This document shows positions 5,787-62,000 of a stretch of DNA of 64,000 bases, piece by piece (the stretch's first letter is position 1; every line of letters starts with the position of its first letter). Made by a program: the position numbers and the translations under genes. The DNA is from Felis catus (lineage: Eukaryota). The notes beneath the pieces were generated by a model. It did not search any database, had not been told where the DNA came from, and was given only the letters and a program-made list of their open reading frames with translations. Location: the NCBI RefSeq assembly GCF_018350175.1, contig NC_058383.1, positions 18,352,001 through 18,416,000 of the forward strand, in the 5' to 3' direction.

Positions 5787-5830
<44 letters not shown>

Positions 5831-5992: not shown

Positions 5993-6249
5993 CCGGAAAA
6001 GGGACAAGATCTGATGTGGGTGGGAGGAAATCACTCTGACAATTATGTGAAGGTTAAAGAGACCCGCTGAAGTCTTAAATTAGGACACTGTCAATAGAAA
6101 TGGGTGCGGCCAAGTTGGGGGAAAAAAAAAAAAGAATAGCGGTATACAGTTAACAAGTAGCTTTGATTTTTACAACATCCCCGTAAGGCAGGCGTTTCCC
6201 GGTTTTACAGACTCAGCGAGGCTCAGTGACTTGGCCGAAGTCACACAGC

Positions 6250-6800
6250 ACGCTGCTGGCGTAGCCCCGGGTGTCAGTCTTTTCTTTGCAGCGCCGCCGG
6301 ACGCCGCACAAGATGGGGGTCCGACTGCGGCAGGTGGCAGCGGGAAATCGCCACTTCCGTTCAGTAACGGCGGGAAAACCTGGTCGACCACGGCTACGAG
6401 GAGCTGGTGACCGCAGAGGATCTGGCCGGGGAAGAACGGCTGGGAGAAGGAATTTGGGTCTCGGCGGCCGCCGTAGGAGCGGCGCTCGGATCCCCATGGC
6501 AACGGCAAGAAGCAGCGGGAGCTTCTGGGCGGTGCTGCCGCCGCGGCGGATTGGATGAGCGCGGCGCGGAATCCGTGAACTGCCCGCGGCCCCGCGGGTG
6601 CAGGTGCTGGGGACCAGCGGACGGAGGGGGCCGGGGTGTGGGGACAGTCAAGGGTGTGGCCAGGGCCAGGCTGGGGCCTGCGAGGGGGCGCCGCCCCGAA
6701 TCCCCCGGACCCCCGACCCCACTGTCCCGACCAGTAGCCATCGTTCGGCCTCAGTTTCTCCAAACTGGGCGGGGGGTATCGGGCACCCCAGTCCAATGGC
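6250..6800. promoter_or_regulatory. CpG-island promoter of the upstream ORF / long ALDOA transcript; probably bidirectional (TLCD3B/FAM57B lies on this side in human)
   Basis: High CpG density, ETS-like ccacttccg at 6351, RFX X-box-like ccatggcaac 6494-6503, acceptor tctcctctgcag at 6842 opening the ATG exon. Bidirectionality is inferred from synteny. Confidence 0.7.
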
Positions 6801-6872: not shown

Positions 6873-9800
6873 ATGGACGTGAGTCCTAGGCCCCTTACCC
6901 TTTCCCGGAGGGACCCCGTAAGTGCCTTAAACTCGCCCTGACTTTGCCTGCCTTCGAGCCCGGACTGGACAGGGGGCTCTGTACCCAACGTAGACCCTTC
7001 GAGCTCCGGAGGAGAGCTGTGAGACAGTGCCGGGAATAGACTTCCCACGGAGCGCACATTCCCGCGCTTCTTGGCAAGATGAGATGCTTGCCAAGTAATC
7101 AAGGAGAAGAGGCATCCCAGGCTGGGGGAGCAGCTCGGGCAGAGCCTCGGGGTGGGAGAGAGGGTAGGCGTTTGGGGAGCTGCTGGGACTTCAGTATGGC
7201 TGGAGTGGAGAGGAGGAGGGAGGCTGAGGTGGGCAGGGCTAGCCTCGGGGCTTTGTCACCGAGATAAGAAGTTTGGACTGAGTCACTGGGAGCCATTGAA
7301 GGACTGGAAGGAAAGGACAGATACACAACACAGCTGGGATGGGAAGGGGCAGAATGGCGGGTTGGAAGACAGTCAGCGGCCAGTAATGTGGCCTAAGGGA
7401 CAGTAAAGTAGTACAGAGGAATCAGAGACAATAGATATGTTATGGAGAGGCATTCTGAGAGGAAGAGCAACACATCTTGGAACATTCTAGAATGATCAAC
7501 AGGTACCGATGGTGCTGAAACGGGGGCGACAGAGGAAGGTCACATTTGGGGAACAGGATAGTGTAGTCCCAATGACTCTCTCCCCAGCATCTGATGGCTG
7601 TTCCTCCCCTCTTCCCAGCCACCTCCGGTGTCCCTCCTGGTATTTTTGCCTTCCTGCAGCCCCTCCCACCTCCTTGTCACCCCTTCCTCCTGTGCTTGTC
7701 CAGGCCTCCTCTAGCCCGTGGAACCCAACCCCGGCTCCCGTCAGCAGTCCCTCCCTGCTGCTCCCCATCCCCGCCATCGTCTTCATCGCTGTGGGCATCT
7801 ATTTGTTGCTGCTCGGTGTAGTGCTGCTGACGAGACACTGCCTGCTGGTGAGGGGCCTGGTGGAGGCTGAAGGGTGGGCTCTGGGGAAGTGGAGGCCGTC
7901 AGTCGGTGCCCTCATCTGCAGGCCCTTACTCTGAGGCTCCTTTGCCATTTAGTCCCCGCATCTGTACCTATCACGGTCCCTCCTTTCCTGTCCCCCCCGC
8001 ATGCCACCTGGCCCGGATCCTGAGCCCTTTCCATCTCCTAGGCCCAGGGCTGCTGCACGGACTGCAGCTCCCCCTGCAGGAAGCAAGGCGCTTCCCGGCC
8101 CCAGGACTGTTGCTGGACCTGTGCGGAAGCCTGCGACTTCCCTCTGCCCAGCCCCGCCCGCTGCCTGGATGCCTGCTGCCCCCAGCCCACCGAAGCTGTG
8201 AGTTCTTGTCCTGTCCCCGGCTCCCCGAGCCCCGACCTGGGCGCGCTCTGTGCGTTTTTGTGTTGTTGTTGTTCAACAACGTTGATTGCTGAGCACCTGC
8301 TTTAGGCCAGGCCCCGTTCGGGATCCTGGCTCAGCAGACACCATATACAGCACATCACGTACTTTTCTGGTGCTGAAAACTACTTTGAGAGAAGAAAACA
8401 GGGTGGCAGCCGGAGAAAGGTGAGTACCATGTAGGGCACCCAATGGCTTCCGAAAACGGAAATATAAACGACCCCTCTCACCGCTCCTTCTGTTCACTGA
8501 GTGAGCACTACATTCCAGACAGTGTGCCACTTTTACTGGCATTATTATTTTCTCAGCAACCCTGAGAGCTGGGTATTTTTTAAACATTTATTTATTTTTG
8601 AGAGAGAGAGAGAGAGAACGAGTAGGGGAGGGGCAGAAAGAGCCGGAGACACAGAGTCCGAAGCAGGCTCCAGGATCCGAGCTGTCAGCACAGAGCCCGA
8701 CATGGGGCTCGAACTCACGGACTGCAAGATCATGACCTGAGCCGAAGTGAGACGCTCAACTGAGCCACCCAGGCGCCCCTGGGTATTATTTTTAATGTTT
8801 ATTTATTTTGAGAGAGAGAGAGAGGGAGAGAGAGAGAGAGAGAGAGAATCCCAAGCAGGCTCTGCATTGTCAGCACAGACCCTGACATGGGGCTCGATCT
8901 CATGAATCATGAAATCATGACTTAGCTGAAATCAAGAGTCAGACGCTTAAATGACTAAGCCACCCAGGCGCCCCAAGAGCGCTGGGTATTTTTAAAAAGC
9001 TATATAGTACTGATTATGAAAAGCATTGATTACAGTGTGCGTGTCGAAAAACATAGAAAGTACAAGTCACTTTATAAACCAGCTCCATAACCAAGGTTGC
9101 TACATTTTGTGTAAATCCCTCATATACTAATATGCAGTACTATTCCTGCTATCTTATGCCATTATTTGGTAAAGATGGGGTCATACCACACATATTGTTT
9201 CATCACAACTGCTACTTGCCCTTTTTACCTGGACATCACACCTTGACCCCCTAGCTCTGCCTGTGTGTGTATATAGTTAAGTATTTTTATCCTGTTTTTG
9301 CAGGGGGACAAGTTGCCTCCCGGAGGGAGGTTCGGTCAGAGTCTTGCAGAGCAAATCGCTCCATTGTGTGTTGAAACAGAATCCTCAGGGAGGAGCCTTG
9401 CTCCCAGAGGCCAGGCCATTTTTGCCTTTGTGGGTTTTACGATGTTAAATGTAACTGACCACCTTCCTATTTGGGGCTCAGATTTAAACTGCAAAGCTCT
9501 TGCCTTGGAAGTGGTGACCTTCCCCAGGAGGAAAGAGGGAGGATAAAAGACCCAGCAAATTCCCAACTTGTGCGGACCTTAGTTGGTTAAATTCCTGGGA
9601 GAAGTTGTGAGTTTTGAAATAAATTATGAGGCAAGGGGCTCTCCTTCAAATAATCTGCTTTTGGTTTCTGAGGGGTAGCCGGGAGAGGAGCCCAGGACTG
9701 GGGGTAAGAGGGCAAAGGGGAAAACGAAGACCCAGGGTCCTAAAAACTCCTATTTTATAGGAAATGAATTACAAAGTGATTTCTGGCCCCCTCTCCTGGC

Positions 9801-12800
9801 CGGGGGGGGGGGGGGGGTGGGGTGGGGGGGAGGGAGGTTGCCCTTTGCCCCTTCTGTCAGTCTGGGCCTTTCCTCCCTGGTCAGACCCGTGAGGATGGAG
9901 TGAGGAATTCTGGACCTGGAGACCTCAGGGCCTGATCTATCCGGCTTCAGCCAGAGCCAGGAAGGAAGGATTCTAGAATGGCACAGAGCAGGGCGGGATC
10001 ATTCTGTCATTCTGTCCTTGAGCCGTCTCTGTACAAAGTATAGTAAAGTGTCTGTTCTTCAGTTTCCTTATAGTAACAAGGACCACAAATATTACAAAGC
10101 TCTTGCCTATTTTATAGCTGTCCGAAACTGAGGCTTACAGAGGCTTGAGTGAGTCACCTGAGGCCTAGGCCAAGACACCAACCCAGGTGTCTTTTCCTTT
10201 CTGGGACAAACCTGCCTGCTCTGCTTCTTTCTCAAGCATGTGGCAAGGATCTCATTCATTCACTCATTCATTTATTCATTCACTTATGTATTCACCTACC
10301 AAAGATTTATGGGGTCACTGTCAAAGCCCTGTGCCAGGCCCTAGGGGCTCAGCAAAACAAGCTGGACACGGTCCCGGCCGCACAGGGCTTCTATTCGAAT
10401 GAAGGGCAGAGAAGAAAAAGTAGGCAGTTATGCTAGACCATGAGAAAGGAAGTCATACAGCGCAGTGGTTGGTTCTCAGTCCTGTGTGTGATCAGAGGCA
10501 CATGTGAGACATAGAAAACCACGCATCCAGGCCCCATACTCAGTAGGTCTGGGATGGGATTGGAGTTTGTGAATTAAGAAAAATTTTTTTAAATGTTTAT
10601 TTATTTTGGAGAGAGAGAGACAGAATGCGAGTGGGGGAGGGCCAGAGATAGAGGGAGACACAGAAGCCGAAGCAGGCTCCGGGCTCCGAGCTGTAGGCAC
10701 AGAGCCCAACACCGGACTCGAACTCTCAGACCGCGAGATCACGACCTGGGGTAAAGTCGGCGCTTAACTACCTGAGCCACCCAGGCACCCTCGGCTCAGT
10801 TCTTGATTCAAGGCATGCCCCCCCCCCCCGCCCCCGGTTTGCCTCCATGCTGGGCACGGAGCCTATTTAAAAACCTGGGGGAGAGAACGGGGACAAGAAT
10901 ATCTGCCTGCCATTGAGTGTTCACTGTGTACCAGGCATTGTCCTTGCCGCCATGAGCCTATGAAGGAGGCACATTTGGATGAGAAAACTGAGGCTTGAAA
11001 AATGAATTAGCCAAACCTGGGCCTGAATTCGATTCACATCCGGGCCTGAGCTCTAACCACTAAAGATGGCTGGCCTTCCCAAAATCAAAGTGAGAGAAAT
11101 CGAAGCAGAAAGAGCCTAACACACAAGGGTTAACAGTCTTGGGGCATTCTTGCTTAATGTACTGAAGTAGCAGATTCCTTCGAGAAGCCACATGGCTGCT
11201 TGTGAGAGTCGAGAAATCCATTAGACAGTTATAAATGACTAGCTGTAAACCCTTCCAGTGGACAGAGCCCAGAAATACTTTTCATACCCTCTCCTCTGAG
11301 CTGATGGCAACGGAGCGTCTCTCAGCCACTGTCCTGTGTAGGGAGTGACGGTGTGGTCCTCCAAAAACCCACAGAGTCCGCTTCATGCCCAGACTGGGAC
11401 TCCCCAGGGAGGCCCCAAACCACCCCAGCATCAAACACAAGGGAACCACTTCAATCTCCCTTCCACCATGACACCTCTAGCCTCCTTCTTGAGAGACAAT
11501 TCTGCTGGCACTACACCAGCCCAGTTCAGACCCCTGTCCTTGCAGCGGGCAGATCCCCTCCCCGCACCGCAGCCCCTACTGATATCTGATCTCACCAGTC
11601 ATCTGACACCGCACCCCCAAACCTCAGCTGTTTGAAAGGTCATTCCCCTATTCCTGGCTTGGCCTGGTGTCTGATTGAGCTGTGCAACTGTGACTGTCAC
11701 TAGCTCTGCCTCAGGCCTCCAGGAGCCAATCTCCTGTCACATCCTGGGTGTGTCCCACCCCAGCCACTTGGCCTGACTCCAGTCCATGCGTGAAGCAGTC
11801 ACAGATCACCCTTGTCACAGGGCAGGAAGGGAGACATAGGACAGTTCTCCGTTCTTGTCACTAAGGACATGCTGTTCCTAGTTCCCAAGAGACAGACCCT
11901 TCTGATTTCCTTGAAGCCCTCTTCTTTCTTCTTTGCCCAAAGAGGGGGAAATGATTTGATTTATCCACTCATTCAACATTCATTTGTTTCTCACATACCT
12001 ACTGAGCACGAGTACCCGTGCTAGGCCAGTGGTGACATGAGAGAAACTGTCCCTGTCCCCGCAGACCCAGAAGGAAGCTGGTACTCCTGGCATTGGTGTT
12101 GAGGGGTATCCCCCTCTCTAAGCCTCCATTGCCTCTTCTGTAAAGAGGCCCCCTGTGCAAGGTTCTGATACATAAAAGAGAGGTGACTCTGTGTGAAACA
12201 CTACAAAATTTTCTTAGATCTGTACATTACCATTCTCAAAGACAATTGAGATTTTTTAAAAGTCATTCATGAATACAGTCTGTGCCTTGCATGGAGTAGG
12301 CGCTCAGAAATGATGAACGAGATCCTGCAATCTGGTCTCATGCCAAGGAAGAAATTCACAAAACCAAGTCATTTTCATCATGGACAGAAAATGTGTGCTT
12401 TCCCCGGTCTCCTGGCTTGGAATTGAATGAGGCCACAAGGATATAGTAGAATCATCTTGGAGCTGAACATTGGGACTTAGTCAAACAGGACTATTTGGTC
12501 CTCGGTCTCCTTGTCTATTAAATAGGAAGAAGGGAAGAACCGCCTGAACTCAGTTGTTTGGAACACTGCCTCCTTGCTGATTTAATAGCACAGGGAATTG
12601 ATTTGTTCCCAAGAATGGTAGACGGTACCCTCTGTTCCACTGGGCAAATGGGACTCTCCAGGCCTCTCTGTTCCCTTCTCCCCTGAGAGGGAAACAGCGT
12701 AGGGCACTGGTCACCCTTCCTCCTGCCCACCGCCCTCACCCCTTTCTCCTCTCCCTCAGGGTTGGGCCTCTCGCTGCCCTCGCTGCTGCCCACTCTGCGA

Positions 12801-12873
12801 CTGTGCCTGTGCATGCCAACTTCCTGACTGCCAGAGCCTCAACTGTCTCTGCTTTGAGATCAAGCTCCGATGA
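6873..12873 (+). CDS. Uncharacterised 139-aa single-pass membrane protein with Cys-rich tail, encoded in exons upstream of ALDOA (probable orthologue of human LOC112694756); coding exons 6873-6878, 7704-7847, 8042-8197, 12760-12873
   Basis: ATGGAC|gtgagt at 6873; ccag|GCC..CTG|gtgagg (144 nt); ctag|GCC..GCT|gtgagt (156 nt); ctcag|GGT..TGA (114 nt). All introns are phase 0 with canonical GT-AG. Spliced protein: MDASSSPWNPTPAPVSSPSLLLPIPAIVFIAVGIYLLLLGVVLLTRHCLLAQGCCTDCSSPCRKQGASRPQDCCWTCAEACDFPLPSPARCLDACCPQPTEAGWASRCPRCCPLCDCACACQLPDCQSLNCLCFEIKLR. Orthology is from memory. Confidence 0.85.
8575..8974 (-). mobile_element. Two tandem CAN-SINEs (about 8575-8779 and 8785-8974)
   Basis: Both end in gagccacccaggcgcccc; flanked by repeated ctgggtatt target sequence. 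Confidence 0.9.
10583..10790 (-). mobile_element. CAN-SINE (feliform type)
   Basis: gagggagacacagaagccgaagcaggctccgggctccgagctgt.. diagnostic segment. Confidence 0.9.
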
Positions 12874-13198
12874 GGACCCGGAGTCCCTGCCCTTTGGGGA
12901 GCGGCCAACCTCCTGGGCCCACATGTCCCTTTCCCTGAGGGGCGACTGGACACCTTTCTCTAGGCCACTGGAACCACAAATGGCCTGCCCAGCTCATCAG
13001 CCCGGGAACCAGCTGTGGAGAGCCTGGCTTCCTGCAGAGCAGGACTCAGAGAGCCCTTGGCCCGCTGGACTGCAACCCCTTTGGGGGGCCAGGAGGGAGA
13101 GGGGCTAGTGCTCTGGCAGGTGCCCCTCCCCGCCTCTCCTCCTCCCCACATAAACTGTTAAAATTGAAGGTGAGGGTGGGAGACGCTGCTCACCACAG

Positions 13199-13526
13199 AC
13201 CACATTATGGGACAAACTTGAGCCTTGAGCGTCAGGATATAGGGGTACCACAACCACACCTTGTCCGCGGACTCTTGGTTATTTTGAGGTGAGTGTAGTG
13301 CCTGCAGCTGCTCTCCCGCCAAAAGCTTGGTCTCCTGAGAATCACAACAGCCATCATCAGGGCCCAGAGGGGAGGGGGTTGAGAAGGAGGCAGAGAGGGC
13401 CACAGATCTGAGTCCCCTTTCCTCTCCTTCCCTCCCCACAGATCCCTGGCAAAGATTGATTTCTCTTGACAACCTTTGAGGGCCTCAGGCTGGATTTCCA
13501 AGGAAGAAATTTCCTCAGATGGACGG
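13199..13526 (+). other. ALDOA: ALDOA non-coding leader exons N1 (about 13199-13288) and N2 (13442-13526)
   Basis: Donors ttttgag|gtgagt (13288) and ggacgg|gtgagt (13526); acceptor ctccccacag| (13441). Sequence resembles the recalled human ALDOA 5'UTR (..caaagatt.atttctcttgacaacc..ggatttccaaggaagaa..). Confidence 0.7.
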
Positions 13527-13631
13527 GTGAGTGGGCAGGGGCCCTCCCCCTGCCCCCCAACTAGGGCAGGCCCAGAGCTTCCTCCCCCTTCTCTCAGTTT
13601 AGGCCCCACGCTGGCCTGAATGTCAGGGGCT

Positions 13632-13815
13632 TCAGGTTTCCCTAAATATAGGACCCTGCCAGGGGATCCGTGGCAAGGAAAGGGCAGGGGTCACCGGAGA
13701 AGGTTGGGGACATTGGCTGGGGGGAGGGCAGGAGCTGCCTTATAACCCAGCCCAGGAGCGGCCTGGCTCACTCGCTGCTGACCAGGCTCTGCCCGCTCCT
13801 TCAGCCTCCTCGCAG
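13632..13815 (+). promoter_or_regulatory. ALDOA: ALDOA muscle promoter pM and exon M
   Basis: MEF3 motif TCAGGTTTC 13632-13640 next to MEF2 site CTAAATATAG 13642-13651; TATA box at 13741; donor cgcag|gtgggc at 13815. Matches the known pM architecture. Confidence 0.8.
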
Positions 13816-13979
13816 GTGGGCGCCAGCAGGACGCCGCAGGGTTGGGGTTGGGCCTAAGGGGTCCAGATTAGGAGGGGAGGCTTGGCCGGTAGGATGAGGG
13901 ACTCGGAATGTATCTGGGGGCTGACCGGCTAGGGACAGGTTTGAGTCTGGAGGGGGAAGTCAGGTCCCAGGGAGACGTT

Positions 13980-15100
13980 TGCGCAGGGACTCTGGCGCTG
14001 CATCTCCAGACTCGCTGGGGCGAGCGGCGGCCGGCCGGTTCCGCCGCAGTCTGGCTGTGGATGGCGGCGGGGGCCGCAGGCGGGTCCGCGCCGGCCCGGG
14101 CGGAGAGGGCGTGCGCACGCACGGCGAGGCCGGTCCCCCGCGGCCGCGAGCCCGACCCGGGCAGCTGGGGCGCCTACACCGGCGCGGGCGGGCCACCCGG
14201 AACGGCTGCCGCCCGGCCTCCGCCCCCTCCCCCCGCCGCTCTTCCGCCTGGGCTGGTGACCCAGGGAGGGGCGGCCCCGCGCGCCAGAGCCCGCAAGTCG
14301 AGCCTGCAGGCGAGGCCGGCAGACGCCCAACCTCCGGGTTCTGTCACAGTGTGACACACGCTGCATCAGCGCAGGCCGGAAGCTGGGGCTGCCCCGCGGC
14401 CGCGCGGCTGGGCCTAGACCGGGAGGCTGAGCCTCCGTCCTTTCAGGCTCTTGCACCCACTTGCCCCCACCTCCCTTCCCATCTCCTCCGGGGCCCCTAA
14501 TCGGCTGAGTCACGGCTCCCCAGAACGCGCCAACTGGGGGGAGAAGGGAGACGGCGGGTGGGGGGTGGAGAGCCCAGGCGACCCGAAGGATGTGGCCCGA
14601 GTCACGTCCTAGGGGGCCGGGGGGGTGAGCGGGGGGGGGGCAGGGATCGTGTTCTCGTAGCGCTGGCCCCGCCCAAGCGCCGCCTCCGGGCTTCGCCTTT
14701 CGGGGGCGGCCTCTCCACCGTTCCTCTCCTGCAATTGGACGCCAGCGCTCTCCCGGCCCCCTTCAAGGGAAAAAACCCGGCGGAGGCTGGCGCGGTGCCT
14801 TTATAAGCCCGGCGCCACCTCCTGCTTCCCGCCCCCTGCGCCGCCCCCTCCGGAGCTGAGTAGGCTGCGTTCCGCTTGGAACGCGCCGCAGAACCAGGGT
14901 GCTGGTGACGACTGCCGCGTTCGCTCCCTCAGTCCGCTCGCCGGCCCGTCGCCCTCCACCGCCGCACCCCGCAAACCCGCCCCCTCCCGGGCCAGGTGAG
15001 CTCCCCTCGCCGTGTGCGAAGGTCAGGGACCCTGGAGAAGGATCCTGGGGGCAGTGGCCGGTCGGGTCGGAGCCCACCCCCATTCCCCCGTCCCAGCATC
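13980..15100 (+). promoter_or_regulatory. ALDOA: ALDOA housekeeping promoter pH (CpG island) and exon H
   Basis: CpG island; AP-1 TGAGTCA 14506-14512; HIF-type HRE gtcacgtc (GACGTGAC on the minus strand) 14601-14608; TTATAA at about 14801; donor gccag|gtgagc at 14995. Confidence 0.8.
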
Positions 15101-15976
15101 TCCCCCCGCCCCACTACCTCCCACATACATGCTCCCAGCCCGGACTCCTCAACCCTCTTCAGCTTGAGTTTCCTTGGTTTGCTGCGCAATGCAGCGACTA
15201 CGCGCGCTGAGTCATGGCGGAGGAGGAAGCAGGACGAGATGAAGGGCCATTCCTTTTCTCCTTTCCTTGCTGGGATCCCAGGTGCAAAGGATTACGGCCC
15301 CTTTGCCTCTGCGGTGATCCTAAGAGGCAGCGAGGGGGTGGGGGCCAGCCCGTATACTCTCAGGGTTTCCGAAAGCGTGGTTGGTCCCTGCCCTGGGAGG
15401 TGGGACCCCCCTGGCGAGGAGGGGAAACCCCTTGGAAGCGCGTGCTGCTCAGTTAACACTTTCCGTGCCTTTACTTATCTGGTGACCTTGATTGTGAGCC
15501 TGGAACAGCTGCAGCTGTGCGGGCAGACAGGAGCATTTTCAGGGGAAGGGGTGGGGCCGCTCGCCTCTCTACAATTCTCTTACCCTGTATGAGCAATGAG
15601 ATCGGTAAACCTTACCCCGTTCCTCCCCCTTGGGCTGGGCTTCCTCTGCTGCCCTTTCCTGGGCTTCCCGTTACCCTCCTGCCCTTTTTTCTAACACCCT
15701 TTTCCTAAGGCCCTCCCCCAACCCTGGGAGGAGAAGCTTGACCTTGGGATGTCCTTGAGGCTTTGGAGCCTGGGCCGGCCCTGGAATCTTGGGTGGATCC
15801 CGTACAGCAGTCAGAAGATCTGGGTTCTAGTCTCAGCTCTGGCCCTTGGTTTCTGTGGGACTTGAAGCCCAGAGCTTTCCCTTCTCTGGGTCCTTCTGTT
15901 GGGCCCTCTGCCTGATGTGCGACCTCTGAATTCTAAAATACTCCGGTTCGGTTCTGCTTCTAGGCAAGGTGACCCC

Positions 15977-16117
15977 ATGGCAGAGCGCAAGCCAGAAGGG
16001 TCCAGCTTCTACATGACCTGTCTTTCCATGTCTCTGGCCTATTGCTTTACCACAGATGCCAGTACGCAACCCCACCCTAAGGTGGGAAACACCCAGCAAC
16101 AAACAAAGTTAGGGAAG
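15977..16117 (+). CDS. ALDOA: Alternative ALDOA coding exon giving an N-terminally extended (testis/sperm-type) isoform
   Basis: [47 protein letters not shown]|gtacag splices in frame to 16316 ([10 protein letters not shown]..). Similar to human isoform 2 N-terminus [11 protein letters not shown].. Confidence 0.85.
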
Positions 16118-16330
16118 GTACAGGAGGCAGGCCTAGTACAGGGAAGTTGGGTGTAAGGGAGGCTTGGGCACAGGAAGTGCCCCAAGACCTGTCCAGTGTG
16201 GACTAGGGGAGGTAGGGAACCTTTGTCCTGACCTCCAGGCAAGGGGCCCTGCTTGTGGGGAGACCATGGGAAGACCCAGCTAACCATTCCTCCCCTGTCT
16301 GCCTCCTTTGGCCAGGAACTGACCGGCACC

Positions 16331-18951
<2,621 letters not shown>

Positions 18952-24500: not shown

Positions 24501-27500
24501 CACTGCAGGGAGGAACGAAAGAACAAAGTTGTCACTCCCTCTAAATAAGGCAAAAGCGCATCGCTTTGATGGTGTGTTTGATCACTGGGTGCCTTTGGAC
24601 AGTCTGGGGAAAGCCTCCGTGACGGGCGGAGAGGAGGCTCAGCCAGGGGCACGGTCTCGGAGCGCTCCAGGCCAAGGGAGCAGCATGAGCAGAGAGCTCT
24701 GCGTGGAGAGCGGGTCTGTTCTCTGGAACGAGCACTGGATGTGGGAAAGAGGGCAACAGGGAGGGTCAGGGCTTGAAAGGCCACTGTCTCCTTGGAAAGG
24801 CTTTGAATGCCGCAGCAAGAGTTTGGGCTCTGGCCTCTTGGCCTTGGGGAGGCCTGCGGTCAGCCCATCCTGGGGATATTATTGCACACCTCACTCCTGC
24901 CCCCTAGAGGTTCAAGGCCCACCTCAGATCCTCCCTTCNNNNNNNNNNNNNNNNNNNNNNNNNNNNNNNNNNNNNNNNNNNNNNNNNNNNNNNNNNNNNN
25001 NNNNNNNNNNNNNNNNNNNNNNNNNNNNNNNNNNNNNNNNNNNNNNNNNNNNNNNNNNNNNNNNNNNNNNNNNNNNNNNNNCTTCCAGAGCCTAGGCACA
25101 TGGCCGTTCCCCTTAATCTTGTGGGCTACAGAGGTCTGCCCCTCATCCCTGAGAGCCCGGAAAGTCCCGTGTATCCCTCTCCCATCTTCAAGGGAGCCTT
25201 GCTGTACGAAATGGATGTTACGGGAAGGGTCTTTTGAGCTGATGGGGGGATACTCTTGGTCAGGGCAGAAGGACTCTGAATCTGGTGAGTGATTCTACCC
25301 CACACATTTCTGTGTATTCTGTGTCATTAGTAGCTTTATTCCGGGTTCCTTGAGGGAAACACGGAGAGGAAGGGGCCGGGTCCTCCAGAAGCTACAGGCC
25401 TAGCTCGAGAGACCTAGTTTTAGCTCTTGCCCACAGAACAGCTGGCACCCAGTGCGGGATGGGGGGTGATTCCAGAGCAGACGAAGTCCGGGTAGGAGAG
25501 TAGATTGGTGGCCCTGAGAAGTGGAGGTTTCGCTGGGAGCGATAAGGAGCTACTAAAGCGGCGGGTGTTCTGAAGGCCAGCCCCTGGAGGCGGAGGCTCT
25601 CCGGCTGTGCGAGTTCCGACCCAGCTCTCCTCACTTCCTAGGTATGCGGCGACATCCACGGGCAATTCTATGACCTCAAGGAGCTGTTCAGAGTGAGTGT
25701 GGGGAGACTCTGGGACAGGTGACCTGGGGGGTGACTGGAAGACCCCTTTAATTGAGAGTGGAAGCTTTGACTTGGGTGAGTGAGAGGCCTCCTGTTTGGT
25801 GGGCCCTCTGTGAAAGAAGGGCCTCAACTTGACCGGCACATGGGCTGCCACGGCGGGGGACAGGTGAGGATCGAGCAAACCCTTCTCCCCCCGCTCCTCC
25901 CTCCCCAGGTGGGTGGCGACGTCCCTGAGACCAACTACCTCTTCATGGGGGACTTTGTGGATCGTGGTTTCTACAGCGTCGAAACGTTCCTCCTGCTGCT
26001 GGCACTTAAGGTGGGAACCTGGGCTTCCGGTGCCCACACCCGGGCCGCCTCCGGCCTGACCTGTGTCCTTCCTGCCCTCGTCTCCTTCTCCATCCACCCC
26101 CAGCTCTGAGCCGTCCTGCTGGTGTTCAGCTTGCCCGGGGATGGGCAGAGCAGCTTTCCTTGGCTCGGGGGCATCTGATGGGGTTCCTGGAGGAGAAGGC
26201 GGAGCTGTGGCATTGGAGGGGAGGGAATAGAGGCTCCCCGTGCTCGGAAAGTGGCAGGGTGTTGAGTTCACCTGGGTGCGGTATCCGTTGGTAGGCCAGA
26301 TGACAGAGCACCTGAGGGTCTCGGTAAGGACTTAGTGGTGAAAGGGGAACCGATAGGTTGTAGTTGATGGGGAGGGGTCAGCCTCAAATCCCCTAGAGGA
26401 GGGACCGGGGCCTGTGAGGTTGGCCAGAGATGGCATGACTCTGGGCTGGGGTAGTGGTGAGGTGACAGGGCGGGCAGGTATGAGGAGATCTGGGAAGGGC
26501 CGGTGGGGCTGTGAGGGAGGGACAGAGCCCAGCCCCCAGCCCTGGATCGGTGGCCCCCCTCCAGGTTCGCTATCCTGACCGAATCACCCTGATCCGGGGC
26601 AACCACGAAAGCCGCCAGATCACCCAGGTCTACGGCTTCTACGACGAGTGTCTGCGCAAATATGGCTCGGTGACCGTGTGGCGTTACTGCACTGAGATCT
26701 TTGACTACCTCAGCCTGTCGGCCATCATCGATGGCAAGGTGGGCCGGCTACCGGGTCCCGTGGGGATCGGACTCGCGGGGGAAGAGGCGCTGGGCTCAGC
26801 CGGCCTTCACTCCTTTCTTGTCCCCCTGTAGATCTTCTGCGTGCATGGGGGCCTCTCCCCCTCTATCCAGACCCTGGACCAGATCCGGACGATTGACCGA
26901 AAGCAAGAAGTGCCCCATGACGGGCCCATGTGTGACCTGCTCTGGTCTGACCCTGAAGGTGAGGGCAGGCAGGCAGGGCAGGGTGGCTCTACCCTTAGTG
27001 TGGCAGGAGACTGAGGGGGTCTTGTAGCTAAAGCAAGCGCCTTGAAGAGACAGGCCAGGCGGGCTTAGGGAAGAGCAGAGTGGAGCTGGTCTTCACTGGT
27101 GTCTGCACTTGGCCGGCTTGCCCCCTGGCACCCTCAGAGAGGAGGAGGAGTGTGGGCAGCTGGTGCTCGTGAGCTCGGAGAGGGGATGGGTGTGTATTTC
27201 ATCGCTCAGAGGCTTGTTTGGGACGAAATCATTGGCCCCCTGAACCTGAAGGGGCTTCTGCTGAGTTCACACTCCGAGAACGACGGCCCCACGAACGTCC
27301 CTCATTTTGTGGGGTTCCCCAGCTGGTACGGAGCAGAGCCAAGACTGAACGCCGAGTCTCCCAAGTACCAGTCCAGAGCTCCTGCTGTAACACGCACAGC
27401 CTCCGCCCCCTCACTGCCGTGCCCACCTGCCTGGCCACTGCTCCCAGGGCGGCCAGGAGAGCCCTTGTTGTCACCTGCTGGACCAATGTGGTCATTATAA

Positions 27501-34593: not shown

Positions 34594-36680
34594 TCAGTCC
34601 CAGCCGTTGTCTTTGATCATGTGGTTGAGTTCAATGATGTACTTCCCCTCTTTGTACTTCTGGCTGCTCTCGAAGGCCTGTTCCTGAAAAGAGGGGGAGA
34701 GGACGGCATCTCTGGAGCAAGGGCTTTACCAAAAGGGATCGGGTTGGGGAATAGATACGACTGGCCCCATTTTACATATAAGGAAACTGTCATGCAGAGA
34801 AGCCAAACCACCTGCCCACAAGACACACAGCTGGTAAATGACAGAGCCAGGTTTCTCACTAATGGGACAGACAGAGCTCTCTGAATCACCGGTACTTTTT
34901 AAGTACTAATGTTGGCTCCAACAGAGAGGATATGGAAGTTTCTAAAAGATCCGGGGATTACAAACTGGTAGCCTGAAGGGCAATTTTGGCCTACGCAGGT
35001 GTTTTATTTGGCCATCAGAGAGTTTAGTAAAAATAACTTAAAAATACTAGGATATAGGCAGGCCATGCTTACTCCAGTTTGCTACAGACCCTCCTCCCCC
35101 CCTACCCCAGATCTATGGTGCCTCTTTTGCAGACCCACAGTATGCGCTTGGCCCTTCAAACCCTTGAGTTTTTGACATCTGGATTAGGCCATCTCTTTAT
35201 TTTACAGAGGTCCAGAGAGGCCGAGCCACCTGTCCGGGGACACAAAGCACAAATCTGTGGCAAGGCCAGGCGTGAACTCACATGAGGGCGGGATGCCTGC
35301 CTCTGCTGGGGGCATCCACCTCTCAGAGGCACCAAAACTCCAAGTGAAGCCTGAGGAACCAACCATGTCCCCTACAGTTTCCCAAGAGCATCTTTTTTTG
35401 CTGCATCTAATCTGATCCCCATGACAATTTTGGGTGCCAGGTGGTGGCTTCATCCTCCACAGCCAGATAAGGAAATGAGACTCAGGTAGTGAAATCAGAC
35501 CCCGGATAGCAGCTGTGGCCATGAGGACAGTGAAAAGGAAGCTCATGGACCCAAGTTCCATGTCACTGTGGGGTCTGGGGCAACTTCTCTGAACCTCTGA
35601 ATGACAATGGAAGCCAGTGGCCGAGGATCTGGAGTTAAAAACAGACAGACAACAAAACACGCAACCAGGATTCTGGTACCTGTTCTGTTCCTTACCCGTG
35701 GTGTGACCTTGGGAAAGTTACCTACCATCTCTGGGCCTTCCTTTCTTCTGTAAAGTGGAGATAATTACAGACTCTACCCACAGGATTGTTGTAACAATGA
35801 AATGAGATAACATATGCCAAGCACATAACAGTGCGTGGCACGTAAGCATTCAATAAATGGTCATTCTGCCGATCGCCTCATCTCTAAAATGGGACGCATG
35901 TGCACGTGAGGGATGGGTGGAGAGAAAAATTCTAAAAGCCCTTGCAAGATGTGACAGAAGAGGGCATGGTCAGGGGATGAAAAGACAGTCTGACTTGAGT
36001 GAGCTGGGCCTGTACACTCTGGAAGGTTACCAGATGACTGCTTGTGAGGAGGAGGTGAAGTGAGGTTGGGTCAAAGGCTTGCCTGGGGTCAGGGGTCACG
36101 GACTCACATATTTCCAGCCCAAAGTCGTCTTGCAGTTCTCGCAGTGGATGTCAGCCACAGCATGGAGGCCTGTCAGCAGTACCCGTTCCTCGGCTGGCCC
36201 GCAGCCCACGTTCACCCTGCAGGGACATGGGGGCAGTCCCAGGGAGGGTCCCGCCATCACAAAGCCCCCCGCTAGCTTGTATCCAACTGTGTCTGTTCTT
36301 AGCATCCAAGAGAAGGGCGATCACATCAGCTTCCAACCTGAATCAGGGGACTCTGGGAGTCTCAGCACGATGCCAGGGGCCACAGGTCACAACAGAGGTC
36401 AGGGAAAGAAAGAAGGGGGACCAAATACTCACACAGAGTTGAAGAGGTAGGCACGCCCCTGACTGCCCTGGAAGGACTAAAGGGTGGAGGGAGAAAGGAA
36501 GGGAGTCAGGGCCATTGGTGGGAGAGCTGCCAGGTAGCCCCTCTCGCCTNNNNNNNNNNNNNNNNNNNNNNNNNNNNNNNNNNNNNNNNNNNNNNNNNNN
36601 NNNNNNNNNNNNNNNNNNNNNNNNNNNNNNNNNNNNNNNNNNNNNNNNNNNNNNNNNNNNNNNNNNNNNNNNNNNNNNNN
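34594..36680 (-). CDS. YPEL3: Yippee-like 3; visible exons 36476-36433, 36216-36108, 34683-34594; first coding exon in N-gap 36550-36777 (start approximate)
   Basis: [15 protein letters not shown] / [36 protein letters not shown] / [35 protein letters not shown] on the minus strand at 34216-34221. Confidence 0.95.
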
Positions 36681-37249
36681 NNNNNNNNNNNNNNNNNNNN
36701 NNNNNNNNNNNNNNNNNNNNNNNNNNNNNNNNNNNNNNNNNNNNNNNNNNNNNNNNNNNNNNNNNNNNNNNNNNNNNGACCAGGGCCACACATACGCGGG
36801 CACACCCAGGGCCATGGGGACTCTCTCCGTCACACTTGGCTGCTGTCTCCTCTCCCCAGAGGCAGCAGCTTCTCCAGGGGCCGGAACCGGCTCAGTTTTG
36901 ACTCACTGAGGAGGCCTCAAGTTGCATCACGGGGAAACTGAGGCTTGGAGAAGCCTGAGGTGAGTCACGCATCTAATTCCGGCCTCACCCCTGCGGACCT
37001 GGCAGTTGAAGCTGGAGGAAGGGGCTCTGGCGTGGATGAGCTGTCAGTTCTCATTTAGGGGGAGTATGGAGGGGTTAGGAGCTGGAGGGTCCTGAACTGC
37101 CAAGGGCGGGGCGGGGCGGGGTGGGGGGTTAGCAGCTCCACTTGAAGTACAAGGGAGTTCACCTGGGGAGAGGGTCCCTCACCTGGAAGAGGCAGAGGCC
37201 CTCACTGAAGGTGGACGGTCACCTAGGAGGGGAGGGGCTCTTACCTGGG

Positions 37250-46191: not shown

Positions 46192-50959
<4,768 letters not shown>

Positions 50960-59073: not shown

Positions 59074-62000
59074 CAGGGCTCACCTGAAACGGGGCTTGAG
59101 CTCACCCAATGTGGGACTGGAACTCCCGAGAGATCACGACCTGAGTCAGAGCCCCCCAGGTGCCCTCAGCCTATTTGTATCTTTCAATCTAAATTTCCCT
59201 TATTGTTTTATTTTGCATTGAGTACATATTGTCATATATCATTTTTTTTCTATAATTTTTTTTACTGATTTTTCATTTATTTTCCTAATGGTTGCTTTAG
59301 GGCTTACCATATGCATATTAACTAATCAGAATCTACTTTGAATTTATGCCAACTTAATTCCATGGGGATATAGAATGTTACTCCTATGTCACTCTATTCC
59401 CCCTTCCCATTTTTATGCTGTTAGTGTTAACACATATCACTACATGTTTCAAACCTGACAATACATTGTTATACATTTTTATAATTTTATGTCATTTAAA
59501 AAGCTGAGAAAAGAAAGAACAAGTATATATGTAGCATTTCCTTTTGTTTTGTTTTGTTTTTTTTTCTTTTAAGTAGGCTCCAACACCCAGCAGGAAGCTC
59601 AATACAGGGCTTGAACTCACGACCCTGAGATCAAGACCTGAGCTGTGGTCAAAAGAAAGGTGCTTAACCAACTGAGCCACCCAGGCACCATTTTATTTAG
59701 AATTCCTTATATTTATTCCACCATTTCTGGTTCTCTTAGTTTGTTTCTGTGGGTTCGTGTTACCATCTGGCATAATTTACTTACACCGATACAACTTTCA
59801 TCCCACCCACCTTCTTTGAGATGTTGTTGTCAAATATATTTTTACATGTTTTTATATATACATTTGTATATGTTATAGACCCAACAACACAATTATACGC
59901 ATATTGTTTTATACTATTGCTTTTAAAATCATTTAAGAGAAGAAAACAAAAATATGCATTCGTACTGACATAATGACATAATCACCTTAATTGGTACTTT
60001 TGTTTTTTGTGTGTGTGGATTTGAATTTCTGTCTGGGTTTACTTGCATTCGGCCTGATACATTTCTTAGTATTTCTTGTAAGGCAGGTCTGCTAACAAAT
60101 TTTCTCAGTTTTGTTTATCTGATAATATCTTAATTTTTATAAACGTTTTAAAAGTTTTTTATTTATTTTGAGAGACAGAGAGAGAGAGAGCAAGTAGGGG
60201 AGAGGCAAAGAGATAGAATCCAGGGCAGGCTCCACACTGTCAGTGCAGAGCCAAATGCAGGGCTTGAACTCATGAGCCATGAGACCATGACCTGAGCCAA
60301 AGTCAGATGCTTAACGTATCGAGCCACCCATTTTACCTTCATTTGTGAAAGATAGTTTTGCTGGATATAAGATTTATTGGTTGATTCTTTTTCTTTCAGT
60401 ACAGTTGATCCTTATTATTCACAGATTCTCTATTTGCGAATTGCTTACTTACTACATTTTATTGAGTGTGCTCCCAGCTGAGGTTGAACAGAGTGATGCT
60501 CTGCCCTCTTATTTCAGCTCTTGTAATAAACAAGTGTCCTTGTCGTGGTCTAGTTAGTGCCATGATTTTGAATTTTTGTGCATTTTATTGGTGTATTCAC
60601 TGTTTAAATAGTTCCCAAAAATAGTGTTGAAGTGCTGTCCAATGTTCCTACGTGCAAGAAGGCCATAATGTGCCTTAGGAGAAAAATACATGTGCTAGAG
60701 AAGGTTCATTCAGGCATGAATTATAGTGCGGTTGGCCATGAGTTTAACGTTAGTGAATCAATAATATATATTAAATAAGGTGTCTTTAAGCAGAAACACA
60801 CATAAAACAAGGTTATACAAACTTTGAAAAACATGAGTTTGAACTACACAAGTCCATTTGCACATGGAATGTTTTTTCAATAAATAGATTGGAAAATTTT
60901 TTGAAGATTGAAATTTACAATTTAAGAAAACTCGTAGATGTCCAGCTTTAGCTGAGGTCACGATCTTGCATTCATGGGTTTGAGCCCCGTGTTGGGCTCT
61001 GTGCTGACAGCTCAGAGCCTGGATCCTGCTTCAGATTCTGTGTTTCCTTCTGTATCTTCAGATTCTGTGTCTCTGCCCCATCCCTGCGAGTGCTCTGTCT
61101 CTCTTGGTCTCTCAAAAAAATAAAATAAATGTTAAAAAAATTAAAAAATAAAAACACATAGATACACCATGTAGCCTAGAAATGCCAAAAAATTAAGAAA
61201 AAGTTAGGTGTTGNNNNNNNNNNNNNNNNNNNNNNNNNNNNNNNNNNNNNNNNNNNNNNNNNNNNNNNNNNNNNNNNNNNNNNNNNNNNNNNNNNNNNNN
61301 NNNNNNNNNNNNNNNNNNNNNNNNNNNNNNNNNNNNNNNNNNNNNNNNNNNNNNNNTTGGCATCCCAACATCTGTGCTGTTCAAGGGTCAACCTTATATT
61401 GATCAGTTGACAAAAATATTGTGACCAGAGTCTGGCATGAACTTAACCTTGTATTTCCTCCTAAGAACAGCGATTTAGTATTTGCTAACTCAGTGTTTGC
61501 AGTGACTTTATAGAATATAACTACCATGAACAATGGGACTCAACTGTACTTTGAATATGTCATCCTACTGCCTCTGGCCTCCATCATTTTGGATAAGAAG
61601 TCAGTTGTTAATCTTATTGTAGATCCTTTGCATGTGATGCTTTTTTTTTTTTCTCTTAATGTTTCCAAGACTTTCTCTTTGTCTTTCAGTACTCTTACTG
61701 TTATGTTTCTGGGTGTGGATCTCTTTGTACTTATCGGTACATACATCGGAGTTCATTGAGCTTCATATTTTAGCAAATTTGGAAAGCGTTTAACCAAGTT
61801 TTCTTCAACTTTTTTTCTATTCTTTTCTCCTGTCCTCTGGTACTCTTATTACATCTATGCTGGTATTCTTTTTTCTTTCTGATGTTTATTTATGTATCTT
61901 GAGACAGAGAGAGAGAGAGAGAGAGAGCGCACATGCAGGGGAGGGGCTGAGAGAGAGAGGGGGAGAGAGAGAATCCCAAGCAGGCTCTGAACTGCCAGCA

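What the first reader, a model, noticed from the sequence alone, without database searches (positions are those of the whole stretch)
6873..12873. Hidden spliced gene in the ALDOA 5' region: 139-aa membrane protein with a 22-cysteine tail
Seen in sequence: four coding exons with canonical splice sites, all phase 0, join into a stop-free 139-aa ORF that the six-frame track fragments or misses. The protein has a short Ser/Pro/Thr N-terminus with no signal peptide, one hydrophobic helix (residues 24-44), then RH and a tail holding all 22 Cys (CC, CxxC and CxCxCxC motifs) ending CFEIKLR. Inference: a type III membrane protein whose cytosolic tail is multiply palmitoylated or binds Zn/Cu in a metallothionein-like way. 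I recall a near-identical uncharacterised human protein (LOC112694756), so it is likely conserved and annotated but has no described function that I know of.
Basis: partly seen in the sequence, partly recalled or inferred. Interest (0 to 1): 0.9.

Follow-up and report, generated by a model that had tools for sequence, protein, structure and literature searches.

The report
Annotated ancient cysteine-rich membrane protein gene
The four-exon, 139-residue gene upstream of ALDOA is real, but it is already annotated in cats and is the orthologue of the uncharacterised human gene LOC112694756; it belongs to a very old animal family of small membrane proteins whose function nobody has described.

Summary
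Exons 6873-6878, 7704-7847, 8042-8197 and 12760-12873 have GT/AG borders, are all phase 0, and give 2+48+52+37 = 139 residues with 22 Cys, all after one hydrophobic helix.

The gene is not hidden. The exon translations equal, residue for residue, a RefSeq model of Felinae (P0181, 139 aa). That model shares a 90% cluster with human NP_001352233.1 (LOC112694756 isoform 1). Mouse has a RefSeq NP_ record (Gm57854).

Profile searches find the same architecture in marsupials, monotremes, reptiles, amphibians, bony and cartilaginous fishes, hemichordates, echinoderms, a tunicate, nemerteans, cephalopods and octocorals. No member has a Pfam, NCBIfam or PDB match, and I found no paper on function. Database names such as keratin-associated protein 10-x and 4Fe-4S ferredoxin-type fail their own tests.

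My reading is a type III (N-out, C-in) membrane protein with a cytosolic metal-thiolate tail. Heavy S-acylation is the main rival. Both are inferred, not shown.

Not done:
- The exons were never joined.

The parts
6200..6700 (.). CpG-rich, promoter-like stretch upstream of exon 1
   Evidence: GC 0.62-0.72 throughout; CpG observed/expected about 1.1 at 6200-6599 and 0.55 at 6600-6799. A promoter role is inferred, not shown.
6873..6878 (+). Coding part of exon 1 (Met-Asp), donor GTGAGT at 6879
   Evidence: An MD start is shared by the 139-aa models of many mammals, by the mouse RefSeq NP_ record P0127 and by the transcript-derived ORFs P0084/P0085.
7509..7703 (+). End of intron 1 that is read as a 63-residue N-terminal extension in the 202-aa felid RefSeq isoform X1
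   Evidence: The window ORF 7509..7934 equals the N-terminus of P0111. The extension is not conserved between orders.
7704..7847 (+). Exon 2: Ser/Pro/Thr-rich N-terminus, transmembrane helix, then R-H-C
   Evidence: The exon part is 82% identical on average among 22 genomic read-through ORFs, against 29% and 44% in the flanking translated introns. After, only 7740-7847 was used.
8042..8197 (+). Exon 3: first half of the Cys-rich tail (11 Cys), with conserved CxxC ... CxxC
   Evidence: A phmmer search of 1.84 billion representatives found 7 clusters at E 1e-20 to 1e-25, all orthologues. Mean pairwise identity is 90% in the exon and 19% after it.
12760..12873 (+). Exon 4, coding part: 10 Cys and the family's signature C-terminal motif, then stop TGA at 12871-12873
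   Evidence: The last 27 residues are invariant across placentals. The core motif is kept down to octocorals.
12874..13169 (+). Probable non-coding remainder of exon 4, ending at a strong donor AAG|GTGAGG (13169/13170)
   Evidence: There is no plus-strand AATAAA or ATTAAA between the stop and the ALDOA start at 16332. That transcripts continue into ALDOA is inferred.

Best explanation
This is the felid orthologue of the annotated but uncharacterised gene known as LOC112694756 (human), Gm57854 (mouse) and si:ch211-198p11.6 (the fish name). It is a genuine protein-coding gene of four phase-0 coding exons.

Its 139-residue product is a single-pass membrane protein. It most likely inserts N-terminus out and C-terminus in (type III), so the roughly 90-residue tail with 20-odd cysteines lies in the reducing cytosol.

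I think the tail most likely folds around metal ions (zinc-type Cys4 sites or a small metal-thiolate cluster; copper or iron-sulfur are not excluded). The candidate ligands are the conserved knuckles C55xxC58 ... C74xxC77, C112-P-L-C115, C117xC119, C126 and C131xC133. The juxtamembrane Cys48 is probably S-acylated.

The C-terminal exon carries the invariant core of the family and is kept in all annotated exon-skipped isoforms.

My own odds:
- Real, selected coding gene: about 0.97.
- N-out/C-in topology: about 0.7.
- Metal binding as the tail's main chemistry: about 0.45.
For: Gene and splicing:
- The exon translations are identical to the RefSeq 139-aa felid model P0181.
- Exons 2-4 are contiguous in P0041/P0111.
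- Un-spliceable ORF calls on RNA-type Logan contigs hold the full spliced ORF in other mammals: P0025 on 2.66 kb, P0178 on 1.5 kb, P0056 on 1.26 kb. P0084/P0085 hold MD joined to exon 2.

Selection:
- Placental orthologues have 93% mean column identity with no indels.
- Conservation collapses at the exon borders.
- Homologues with the same architecture occur from mammals to octocorals, at E 1e-15 to 1e-80 (alignments).

Topology:
- The N-terminal flank lacks Lys/Arg in 32 of 43 homologues, while the 15 residues after the helix hold 1-3.
- There is no N-glycosylation sequon.
- The annotated 91-aa isoform without the transmembrane exon has no signal peptide.

Metal:
- 14 Cys are conserved at 88% or more, and C119, C126, C131 and C133 are invariant.
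- They are arranged as paired CxxC and CPxC knuckles.
- Non-Cys residues of the C-terminal motif (D116, Q122, P124, N130, F134, E135) are also near-invariant, which suggests a defined fold rather than a lipidated string.
- Tail Cys counts switch between odd and even (18-27), which speaks against a fixed disulfide set.
Against: - No experiment or paper bears on function.
- There is no sequence match to any metal-binding family.
- AlphaFold2 gives the tail pLDDT of about 40 with both alignments.
- No RNA reads of this species could be laid.
- No codon-level test could be run.
- The positive-inside signal rests on only one to three charges.
- Aromatic residues in the tail are atypical for metallothioneins.
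Confidence: 0.45

Rival explanations
1. Same gene and same topology, but the tail's cysteines are mainly S-acylated (palmitoylated). The tail would then lie flat on the cytosolic face of the membrane, as in cysteine-string protein or the juxtamembrane Cys clusters of synaptotagmin, with no bound metal.
For: There are 21 Cys in an 89-residue tail that starts at the membrane. CC pairs sit close to the helix at C54/C55. Several Cys positions come and go between lineages (54, 91, 108, 121), as is tolerated in acylated strings. The low AlphaFold2 confidence is compatible with a non-globular tail.
Against: The spacing of the non-Cys residues in the C-terminal motif is invariant from octocorals to mammals, which is not what a pure lipid-anchor string would need. 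The 91-aa isoform lacks the membrane anchor. The motif lies 60-90 residues from the helix.
Confidence: 0.25
2. Opposite topology: the hydrophobic segment acts as a type II signal anchor, and the Cys-rich part is luminal or extracellular and disulfide-bonded.
For: Cys-rich domains of small membrane proteins are often extracellular. AlphaFold2 hints at a hairpin at 115-120/130-135, although at pLDDT of about 40.
Against: The N-terminal flank lacks positive charges and the C-terminal flank has them, in nearly all of 43 homologues. Tail Cys numbers are often odd and vary between 18 and 27. The annotated isoform without the transmembrane exon has no signal peptide, so it would be cytosolic.
Confidence: 0.12
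3. The ORF matters mainly as a regulatory upstream ORF in long ALDOA transcripts (translation or NMD control), and the peptide itself is dispensable.
For: There is no AATAAA or ATTAAA between the stop and the ALDOA start, and a strong donor lies 296 nt after the stop. Some annotations file the product under ALDOA: 'ALDOA isoform 8' in chimpanzee and 'Aldolase, fructose-bisphosphate A' in Prolemur.
Against: Amino-acid sequence, Cys pattern and architecture are conserved from cnidarians to mammals. Regulatory uORFs do not keep their sequence like that. Linkage to ALDOA outside mammals was not tested.
Confidence: 0.03
4. It is a keratin-associated protein (KAP10/KAP5 type), or another hair or sperm high-sulfur structural protein, as NCBI's automatic names say.
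For: Only the names and the Cys/Pro-rich composition.
Against: No Pfam keratin-associated family matches even at E up to 10. The protein has a transmembrane helix and the gene has four coding exons next to ALDOA. Homologues exist in animals without hair, down to octocorals.
Confidence: 0.01

Closest known systems
LOC112694756 (human, NP_001352233.1) / Gm57854 (mouse, NP_001405981.1) / si:ch211-198p11.6-named fish genes: an uncharacterised orthologue group
   Same: Same length class (138-139 aa), same four-part layout and same C-terminal motif. The felid model that equals the window's exons shares a 90% cluster with the human protein.
   Different: Nothing of substance; this is a member.
Metallothioneins (Pfam PF00131)
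   Same: About 24% Cys in the tail, arranged as CC, CxC and CxxC. A cytosolic, reducing location is inferred.
   Different: No sequence match. The protein here is membrane-anchored, has aromatic residues (W, F), and has an invariant non-Cys scaffold in the C-terminal motif. Metal binding was not tested.
Cysteine-string protein (DNAJC5) and the palmitoylated juxtamembrane Cys clusters of synaptotagmin-1 (from general knowledge)
   Same: A run of cytosolic cysteines next to a membrane. Synaptotagmin-1 is also a type III protein without a signal peptide.
   Different: No J domain or C2 domains. The Cys are spread over 90 residues with conserved spacing. Acylation was not tested.
Keratin-associated proteins KAP10/KAP5, SMCP, Mst84Db and LCE-like proteins (names given automatically by NCBI)
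   Same: Cys/Pro-rich composition only.
   Different: Here there is a transmembrane helix, a multi-exon gene, no Pfam match, and homologues in invertebrates.
4Fe-4S ferredoxin-type domain (UniProt's automatic name for the Felinae entry); mitoNEET/CISD1 as a membrane-anchored Fe-S protein (general knowledge)
   Same: A Cys-rich cytosolic part on a membrane anchor, so an Fe-S cluster is chemically possible.
   Different: The PS00198 pattern C-x2-C-x2-C-x3-C-[PEG] is absent. There is no Fer4 or CDGSH Pfam match.
Influenza B NB glycoprotein (Pfam PF04159)
   Same: A small type III membrane protein. It was the only named neighbour in the ESM Atlas feature search, at score 0.76.
   Different: A score of 0.76 is below the tool's own level of trust. 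There is no sequence similarity, and NB has no Cys-rich tail.

Membership tests
LOC112694756 orthologue group | Near-identity to annotated members over the full length | tested here: met
   Exon translations equal P0181. P0181 shares a 90% cluster with human NP_001352233.1. Exon 3 alone hits only orthologues, at E 1e-20 to 1e-25.
LOC112694756 orthologue group | Position immediately upstream of ALDOA on the same strand | tested here: met
   The ALDOA start codon is at 16332 and ALDOA coding exons lie at about 17.9-19 kb on the + strand. Published human gene order lists TLCD3B, LOC112694756, ALDOA (PMC11354020).
LOC112694756 orthologue group | Spliced mRNA with these junctions in this species | not testable with these tools
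Spliced ORFs on Logan contigs exist for other mammals.
Keratin-associated proteins (KAP10/KAP5) | Match to the Pfam keratin high-sulfur families | tested here: not met
   No family at E up to 10 for the exon pieces. Only a sub-threshold CD20 hit for full-length members.
Metallothionein | Match to PF00131 or a related family; no aromatic residues | tested here: not met
   No Pfam match. The tail holds 2 Trp and 2 Phe.
Metallothionein | Binds several Zn/Cd/Cu ions through thiolate clusters | not testable with these tools
   Needs ICP-MS or native MS on the protein.
4Fe-4S ferredoxin-type domain | Pattern C-x2-C-x2-C-x3-C-[PEG] or a Pfam Fer4 match | tested here: not met
   A regular-expression scan of P0181 finds none. 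No Pfam match.
Type III (N-out, C-in) single-pass membrane proteins (a topology class, not a homology family) | One hydrophobic helix, no cleavable signal peptide, a short N-terminal flank poor in positive charge, and positive charge after the helix | tested here: met
   KD19 maximum is 3.02 at residues 26-44. AlphaFold2 gives a helix at 24-51 with pLDDT 82-95. The N-flank has no K/R in 32 of 43 homologues and the C-flank has 1-3. The actual orientation has not been shown by experiment.
S-acylated cysteine-string proteins | Thioester-linked fatty acids on the Cys cluster | not testable with these tools
   Needs acyl-biotin or acyl-PEG exchange.

The most novel reading that the evidence does not exclude
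The protein is the felid member of an undescribed, eumetazoan-wide family of membrane-anchored metal-thiolate (or redox/metal-sensing) proteins. The family is defined by a C-terminal motif of the form C-x-C-A-C-x-C-Q-x-P-[DE]-C-x-x-x-N-C-x-C-F-E. In mammals it would be translated from the first cistron of long, distal-promoter ALDOA transcripts, making that a conserved natural bicistronic mRNA inside the region that is the 16p11.2 copy-number interval in humans.
Probability: 0.3. Interest if true: 0.75.

Novelty: already known. Interest (0 to 1): 0.45.

Why it matters
The gene model itself adds nothing new, because RefSeq already holds exactly this protein for Felinae.

What is worth keeping is the picture around it. 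This is a 139-residue membrane protein whose last 27 residues are invariant across placental mammals. Its architecture is recognisable in octocorals. It has no Pfam family, no solved structure, no confident predicted fold and no paper on its function. In databases it is mostly mislabelled as a keratin-associated protein.

In humans the orthologue lies inside the recurrent 16p11.2 deletion/duplication interval (PMC11354020), and it seems to be entangled with ALDOA transcripts. A protein this old and this constrained should have a definite biochemical job, and simple assays (metal content, acylation, topology, knock-out) could find it.

Tried and rejected
Exon 2 was used only from 7740.
- Joined model: the exons were never joined. 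Searches were done exon by exon by reference, and the comparison with P0181 was made piece by piece.
The metagenome scan with the placental profile found no relative; one of its two patterns spanned an exon junction. Exon 4 alone was too short a query. No codon-level test was therefore possible.
- Family searches: Pfam on exon pieces and on 13 full-length members, NCBIfam, and a PDB profile search all found nothing meaningful.
- ESM Atlas: only the protein's own clusters and a 0.76 hit to influenza B NB. The tail alone against named clusters gave nothing.
- AlphaFold2: two runs, with 22 and 43 sequences. Only the helix is confident and the tail is at pLDDT of about 40. I did not run fold search, because matches to such a model would be meaningless.
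- Within-felid contrast of the 65-residue isoform-X1 extension against the 137-residue core: 5 against 3 variable sites, Fisher p = 0.11, so underpowered.
- Literature: the gene symbols and accessions turn up only in 16p11.2 gene lists and expression tables. There were no hits for the mouse, human-protein, octopus or fish identifiers, and nothing relevant for ALDOA + bicistronic + cysteine-rich.
- Human proteins P0179/P0180 appeared in a cluster list. I did not fetch, align or search them.
Full report
**What is in the sequence**

- Exon 1: ATG GAC at 6873-6878, followed by GTGAGT.
- Exon 2: an AG acceptor at 7702-7703, then 48 codons (7704-7847) ending before GTGAGG.
- Exon 3: an AG at 8040-8041, then 52 codons (8042-8197) ending before GTGAGT.
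- Exon 4: an AG at 12758-12759, then 37 codons and TGA (12760-12873).

Every junction falls between codons. The pieces add up to 139 residues with 22 cysteines (1, 11 and 10 in exons 2, 3 and 4). All of them lie after a hydrophobic stretch, and the protein ends CFEIKLR.

**It is an annotated gene, not a hidden one**

A phmmer search with exon 3 against 1.84 billion representatives returned only seven clusters, at E 1e-20 to 1e-25 and 87-96% identity. All are mammalian models of the same gene.

Their cluster members carry the name 'LOC112694756 homolog' or an automatic name such as 'keratin-associated protein 10-x'.

A local comparison showed that exons 2 (from 7740), 3 and 4 lie contiguous and 100% identical in the 202-aa felid model P0041. 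The N-terminal extension of its sibling P0111 equals the window's genomic ORF that starts at 7509. The window therefore comes from a cat-family genome.

The 139-aa RefSeq model P0181 (four XP accessions from Felinae) equals MD plus the three exon translations, residue for residue. The same 90% cluster holds human NP_001352233.1, 'uncharacterized protein LOC112694756 isoform 1', and a 91-aa isoform 2. I did not fetch or compare the human sequences. Mouse has a RefSeq NP_ record, NP_001405981.1 (Gm57854, 138 aa).

Published lists of human 16p11.2 genes give the order TLCD3B, LOC112694756, ALDOA (PMC11354020). This matches the window, where ALDOA starts at 16332 on the same strand.

**Evidence that it is transcribed, spliced and selected**

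Indirect RNA evidence comes from other mammals. ORFs called without splicing on Logan contigs contain the whole spliced coding sequence: P0025 on a 2.66-kb contig, P0178 on 1.5 kb and P0056 on 1.26 kb. P0084 and P0085 have MD joined to exon 2 followed by retained intron 2.

As a proxy I used ORFs that read through exon borders in genomic contigs of about twenty mammals.
- Exon 2: mean pairwise identity is 82% inside the exon, against 29% and 44% in the translated introns on either side.
- Exon 3: 90% inside the exon, against 19% after it.

Nine placental 139-aa orthologues from Afrotheria, Xenarthra and Laurasiatheria align without a single indel at 93% mean column identity. Their last 27 residues are invariant.

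**The family is far older than mammals**

Three profile searches widened the family step by step. All hits have the same order of parts: a short N-terminus, a helix, R-Q/H-C-L-L, a Cys-rich middle with C-L-D-x-C-C-P, and the C-terminal motif.
- First search: marsupials, echidna, turtles, alligator and coelacanth.
- Second search: squamates, salamander, caecilian, frogs, lungfish, sturgeon, bowfin, teleosts, a ray, a chimaera, a hemichordate and octopus.
- Third search: two more hemichordates, starfish, crinoids, a brittle star, a tunicate, nemerteans, an argonaut, two octocorals (E 1e-17 and 3.5e-16) and, weakly, a shrimp.

Alignments confirm the shared architecture. In the octocorals the motif is followed by an extra Gln/Gly/Tyr-rich end. 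No bird turned up in any search.

None of the hits has a precomputed Pfam domain. Pfam, NCBIfam and a PDB profile search gave nothing. Literature searches on the gene symbols and accessions found only gene lists and expression tables.

**How it probably works**

What is shown is one strong hydrophobic helix: a KD19 maximum of 3.02 at residues 26-44 and an AlphaFold2 helix at 24-51 with pLDDT 82-95.

Topology is inferred. In 32 of 43 homologues the N-terminal flank has no Lys or Arg and often carries acidic residues. The 15 residues after the helix carry one to three positive charges, including a near-invariant Arg. By the positive-inside rule this puts the N-terminus outside and the tail in the cytosol, which is a type III protein. 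Two further points fit this. The annotated 91-aa isoform that skips the helix exon has no signal peptide. There is also no usable N-glycosylation sequon.

A cytosolic tail with 18-27 cysteines, whose number flips between odd and even among species, is unlikely to be a fixed disulfide framework.

Fourteen Cys are conserved at 88% or more, and four are invariant (C119, C126, C131, C133). They are arranged as C55xxC58 ... C74xxC77, C112-P-L-C115, C117xC119 and C131xC133. Non-Cys residues between them (D116, Q122, P124, N130, F134, E135) are nearly as constant. Paired CxxC/CPxC knuckles with a fixed scaffold are what metal sites look like, so I rank metal binding first (about 0.45).

Heavy S-acylation comes second (about 0.25). 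A luminal disulfide domain comes third (about 0.12).

AlphaFold2 leaves the tail at pLDDT of about 40. That fits a fold which needs a cofactor, but it proves nothing. I did not search folds with that model.

**The names in the databases**

'Keratin-associated protein', 'sperm mitochondrial-associated cysteine-rich protein', 'Mst84Db' and 'late cornified envelope-like' are composition artefacts. There is no Pfam match, the protein has a transmembrane helix, the gene has several exons, and there are homologues in invertebrates.

UniProt's '4Fe-4S ferredoxin-type domain' label fails the PS00198 pattern and has no Pfam support.

**Relation to ALDOA**

The other note on this window (s1-807925) proposes a transcript shared with ALDOA. 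I checked parts of this.
- There is no plus-strand AATAAA or ATTAAA between the stop at 12873 and the ALDOA start at 16332. Only a weak CATAAA lies at 13149.
- A strong donor, AAG|GTGAGG, lies at 13169/13170.
- Some annotations file the 139-, 91- and 87-aa products under ALDOA.

This fits the ORF being the first cistron of long ALDOA transcripts, but no read or cDNA was examined here.

**Verdict**

The gene is already known as an annotation, so novelty is low.

Its interest lies in being a deeply conserved, unnamed and uncharacterised family, placed inside the counterpart of a clinically important human interval.

Noticed in passing
window 12874-16331: After the stop codon there is no plus-strand AATAAA or ATTAAA before the ALDOA start codon at 16332. 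A strong splice donor (AAG|GTGAGG) sits at 13169/13170, and a TATA-like TTATAA lies near 13740 ahead of a short exon-like stretch. Some databases name the small products 'ALDOA isoform 8' or 'Aldolase, fructose-bisphosphate A'. The ORF probably rides on long ALDOA transcripts.
   Followed up: partly
window 7509-7703: The 202-aa felid RefSeq 'isoform X1' starts at an ATG inside intron 1 and reads into exon 2. This 63-residue extension differs completely between cats, dogs, elephants, cattle and mice, so it looks like a retained-intron or alternative-start artefact rather than conserved protein.
   Followed up: partly
exons 7704-7847 and 8042-8197 (phase-0 cassette exons): In-frame exon-skipped isoforms are annotated in many mammals: 91 aa without the transmembrane exon, and 87 aa without exon 3. 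A cod model (P0171) and an alligator model (P0108) likewise join the helix directly to the C-terminal motif. Whether these isoforms are made is unknown.
   Followed up: partly
related proteins: No bird homologue appeared in any of the three profile searches, although turtles, an alligator and squamates did. This could be real loss or missing GC-rich sequence in bird assemblies.
   Followed up: no
window 16959-17031 (-): The only Rfam hit in the first 24 kb is a tRNA-like match (34 bits) inside an ALDOA intron. It is most likely a tRNA-derived SINE.
   Followed up: no
window 5791-5829 and 8810-8847: Two (GA)n microsatellites of about 19 copies, next to SINE-like sequence. One is upstream of the gene and one is in intron 3.
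   Followed up: no
window 17500-17672, 24939-25081, 36550-36777, 47166-47305, 61214-61356: Runs of N (masked or gaps). The first lies inside ALDOA.
   Followed up: no
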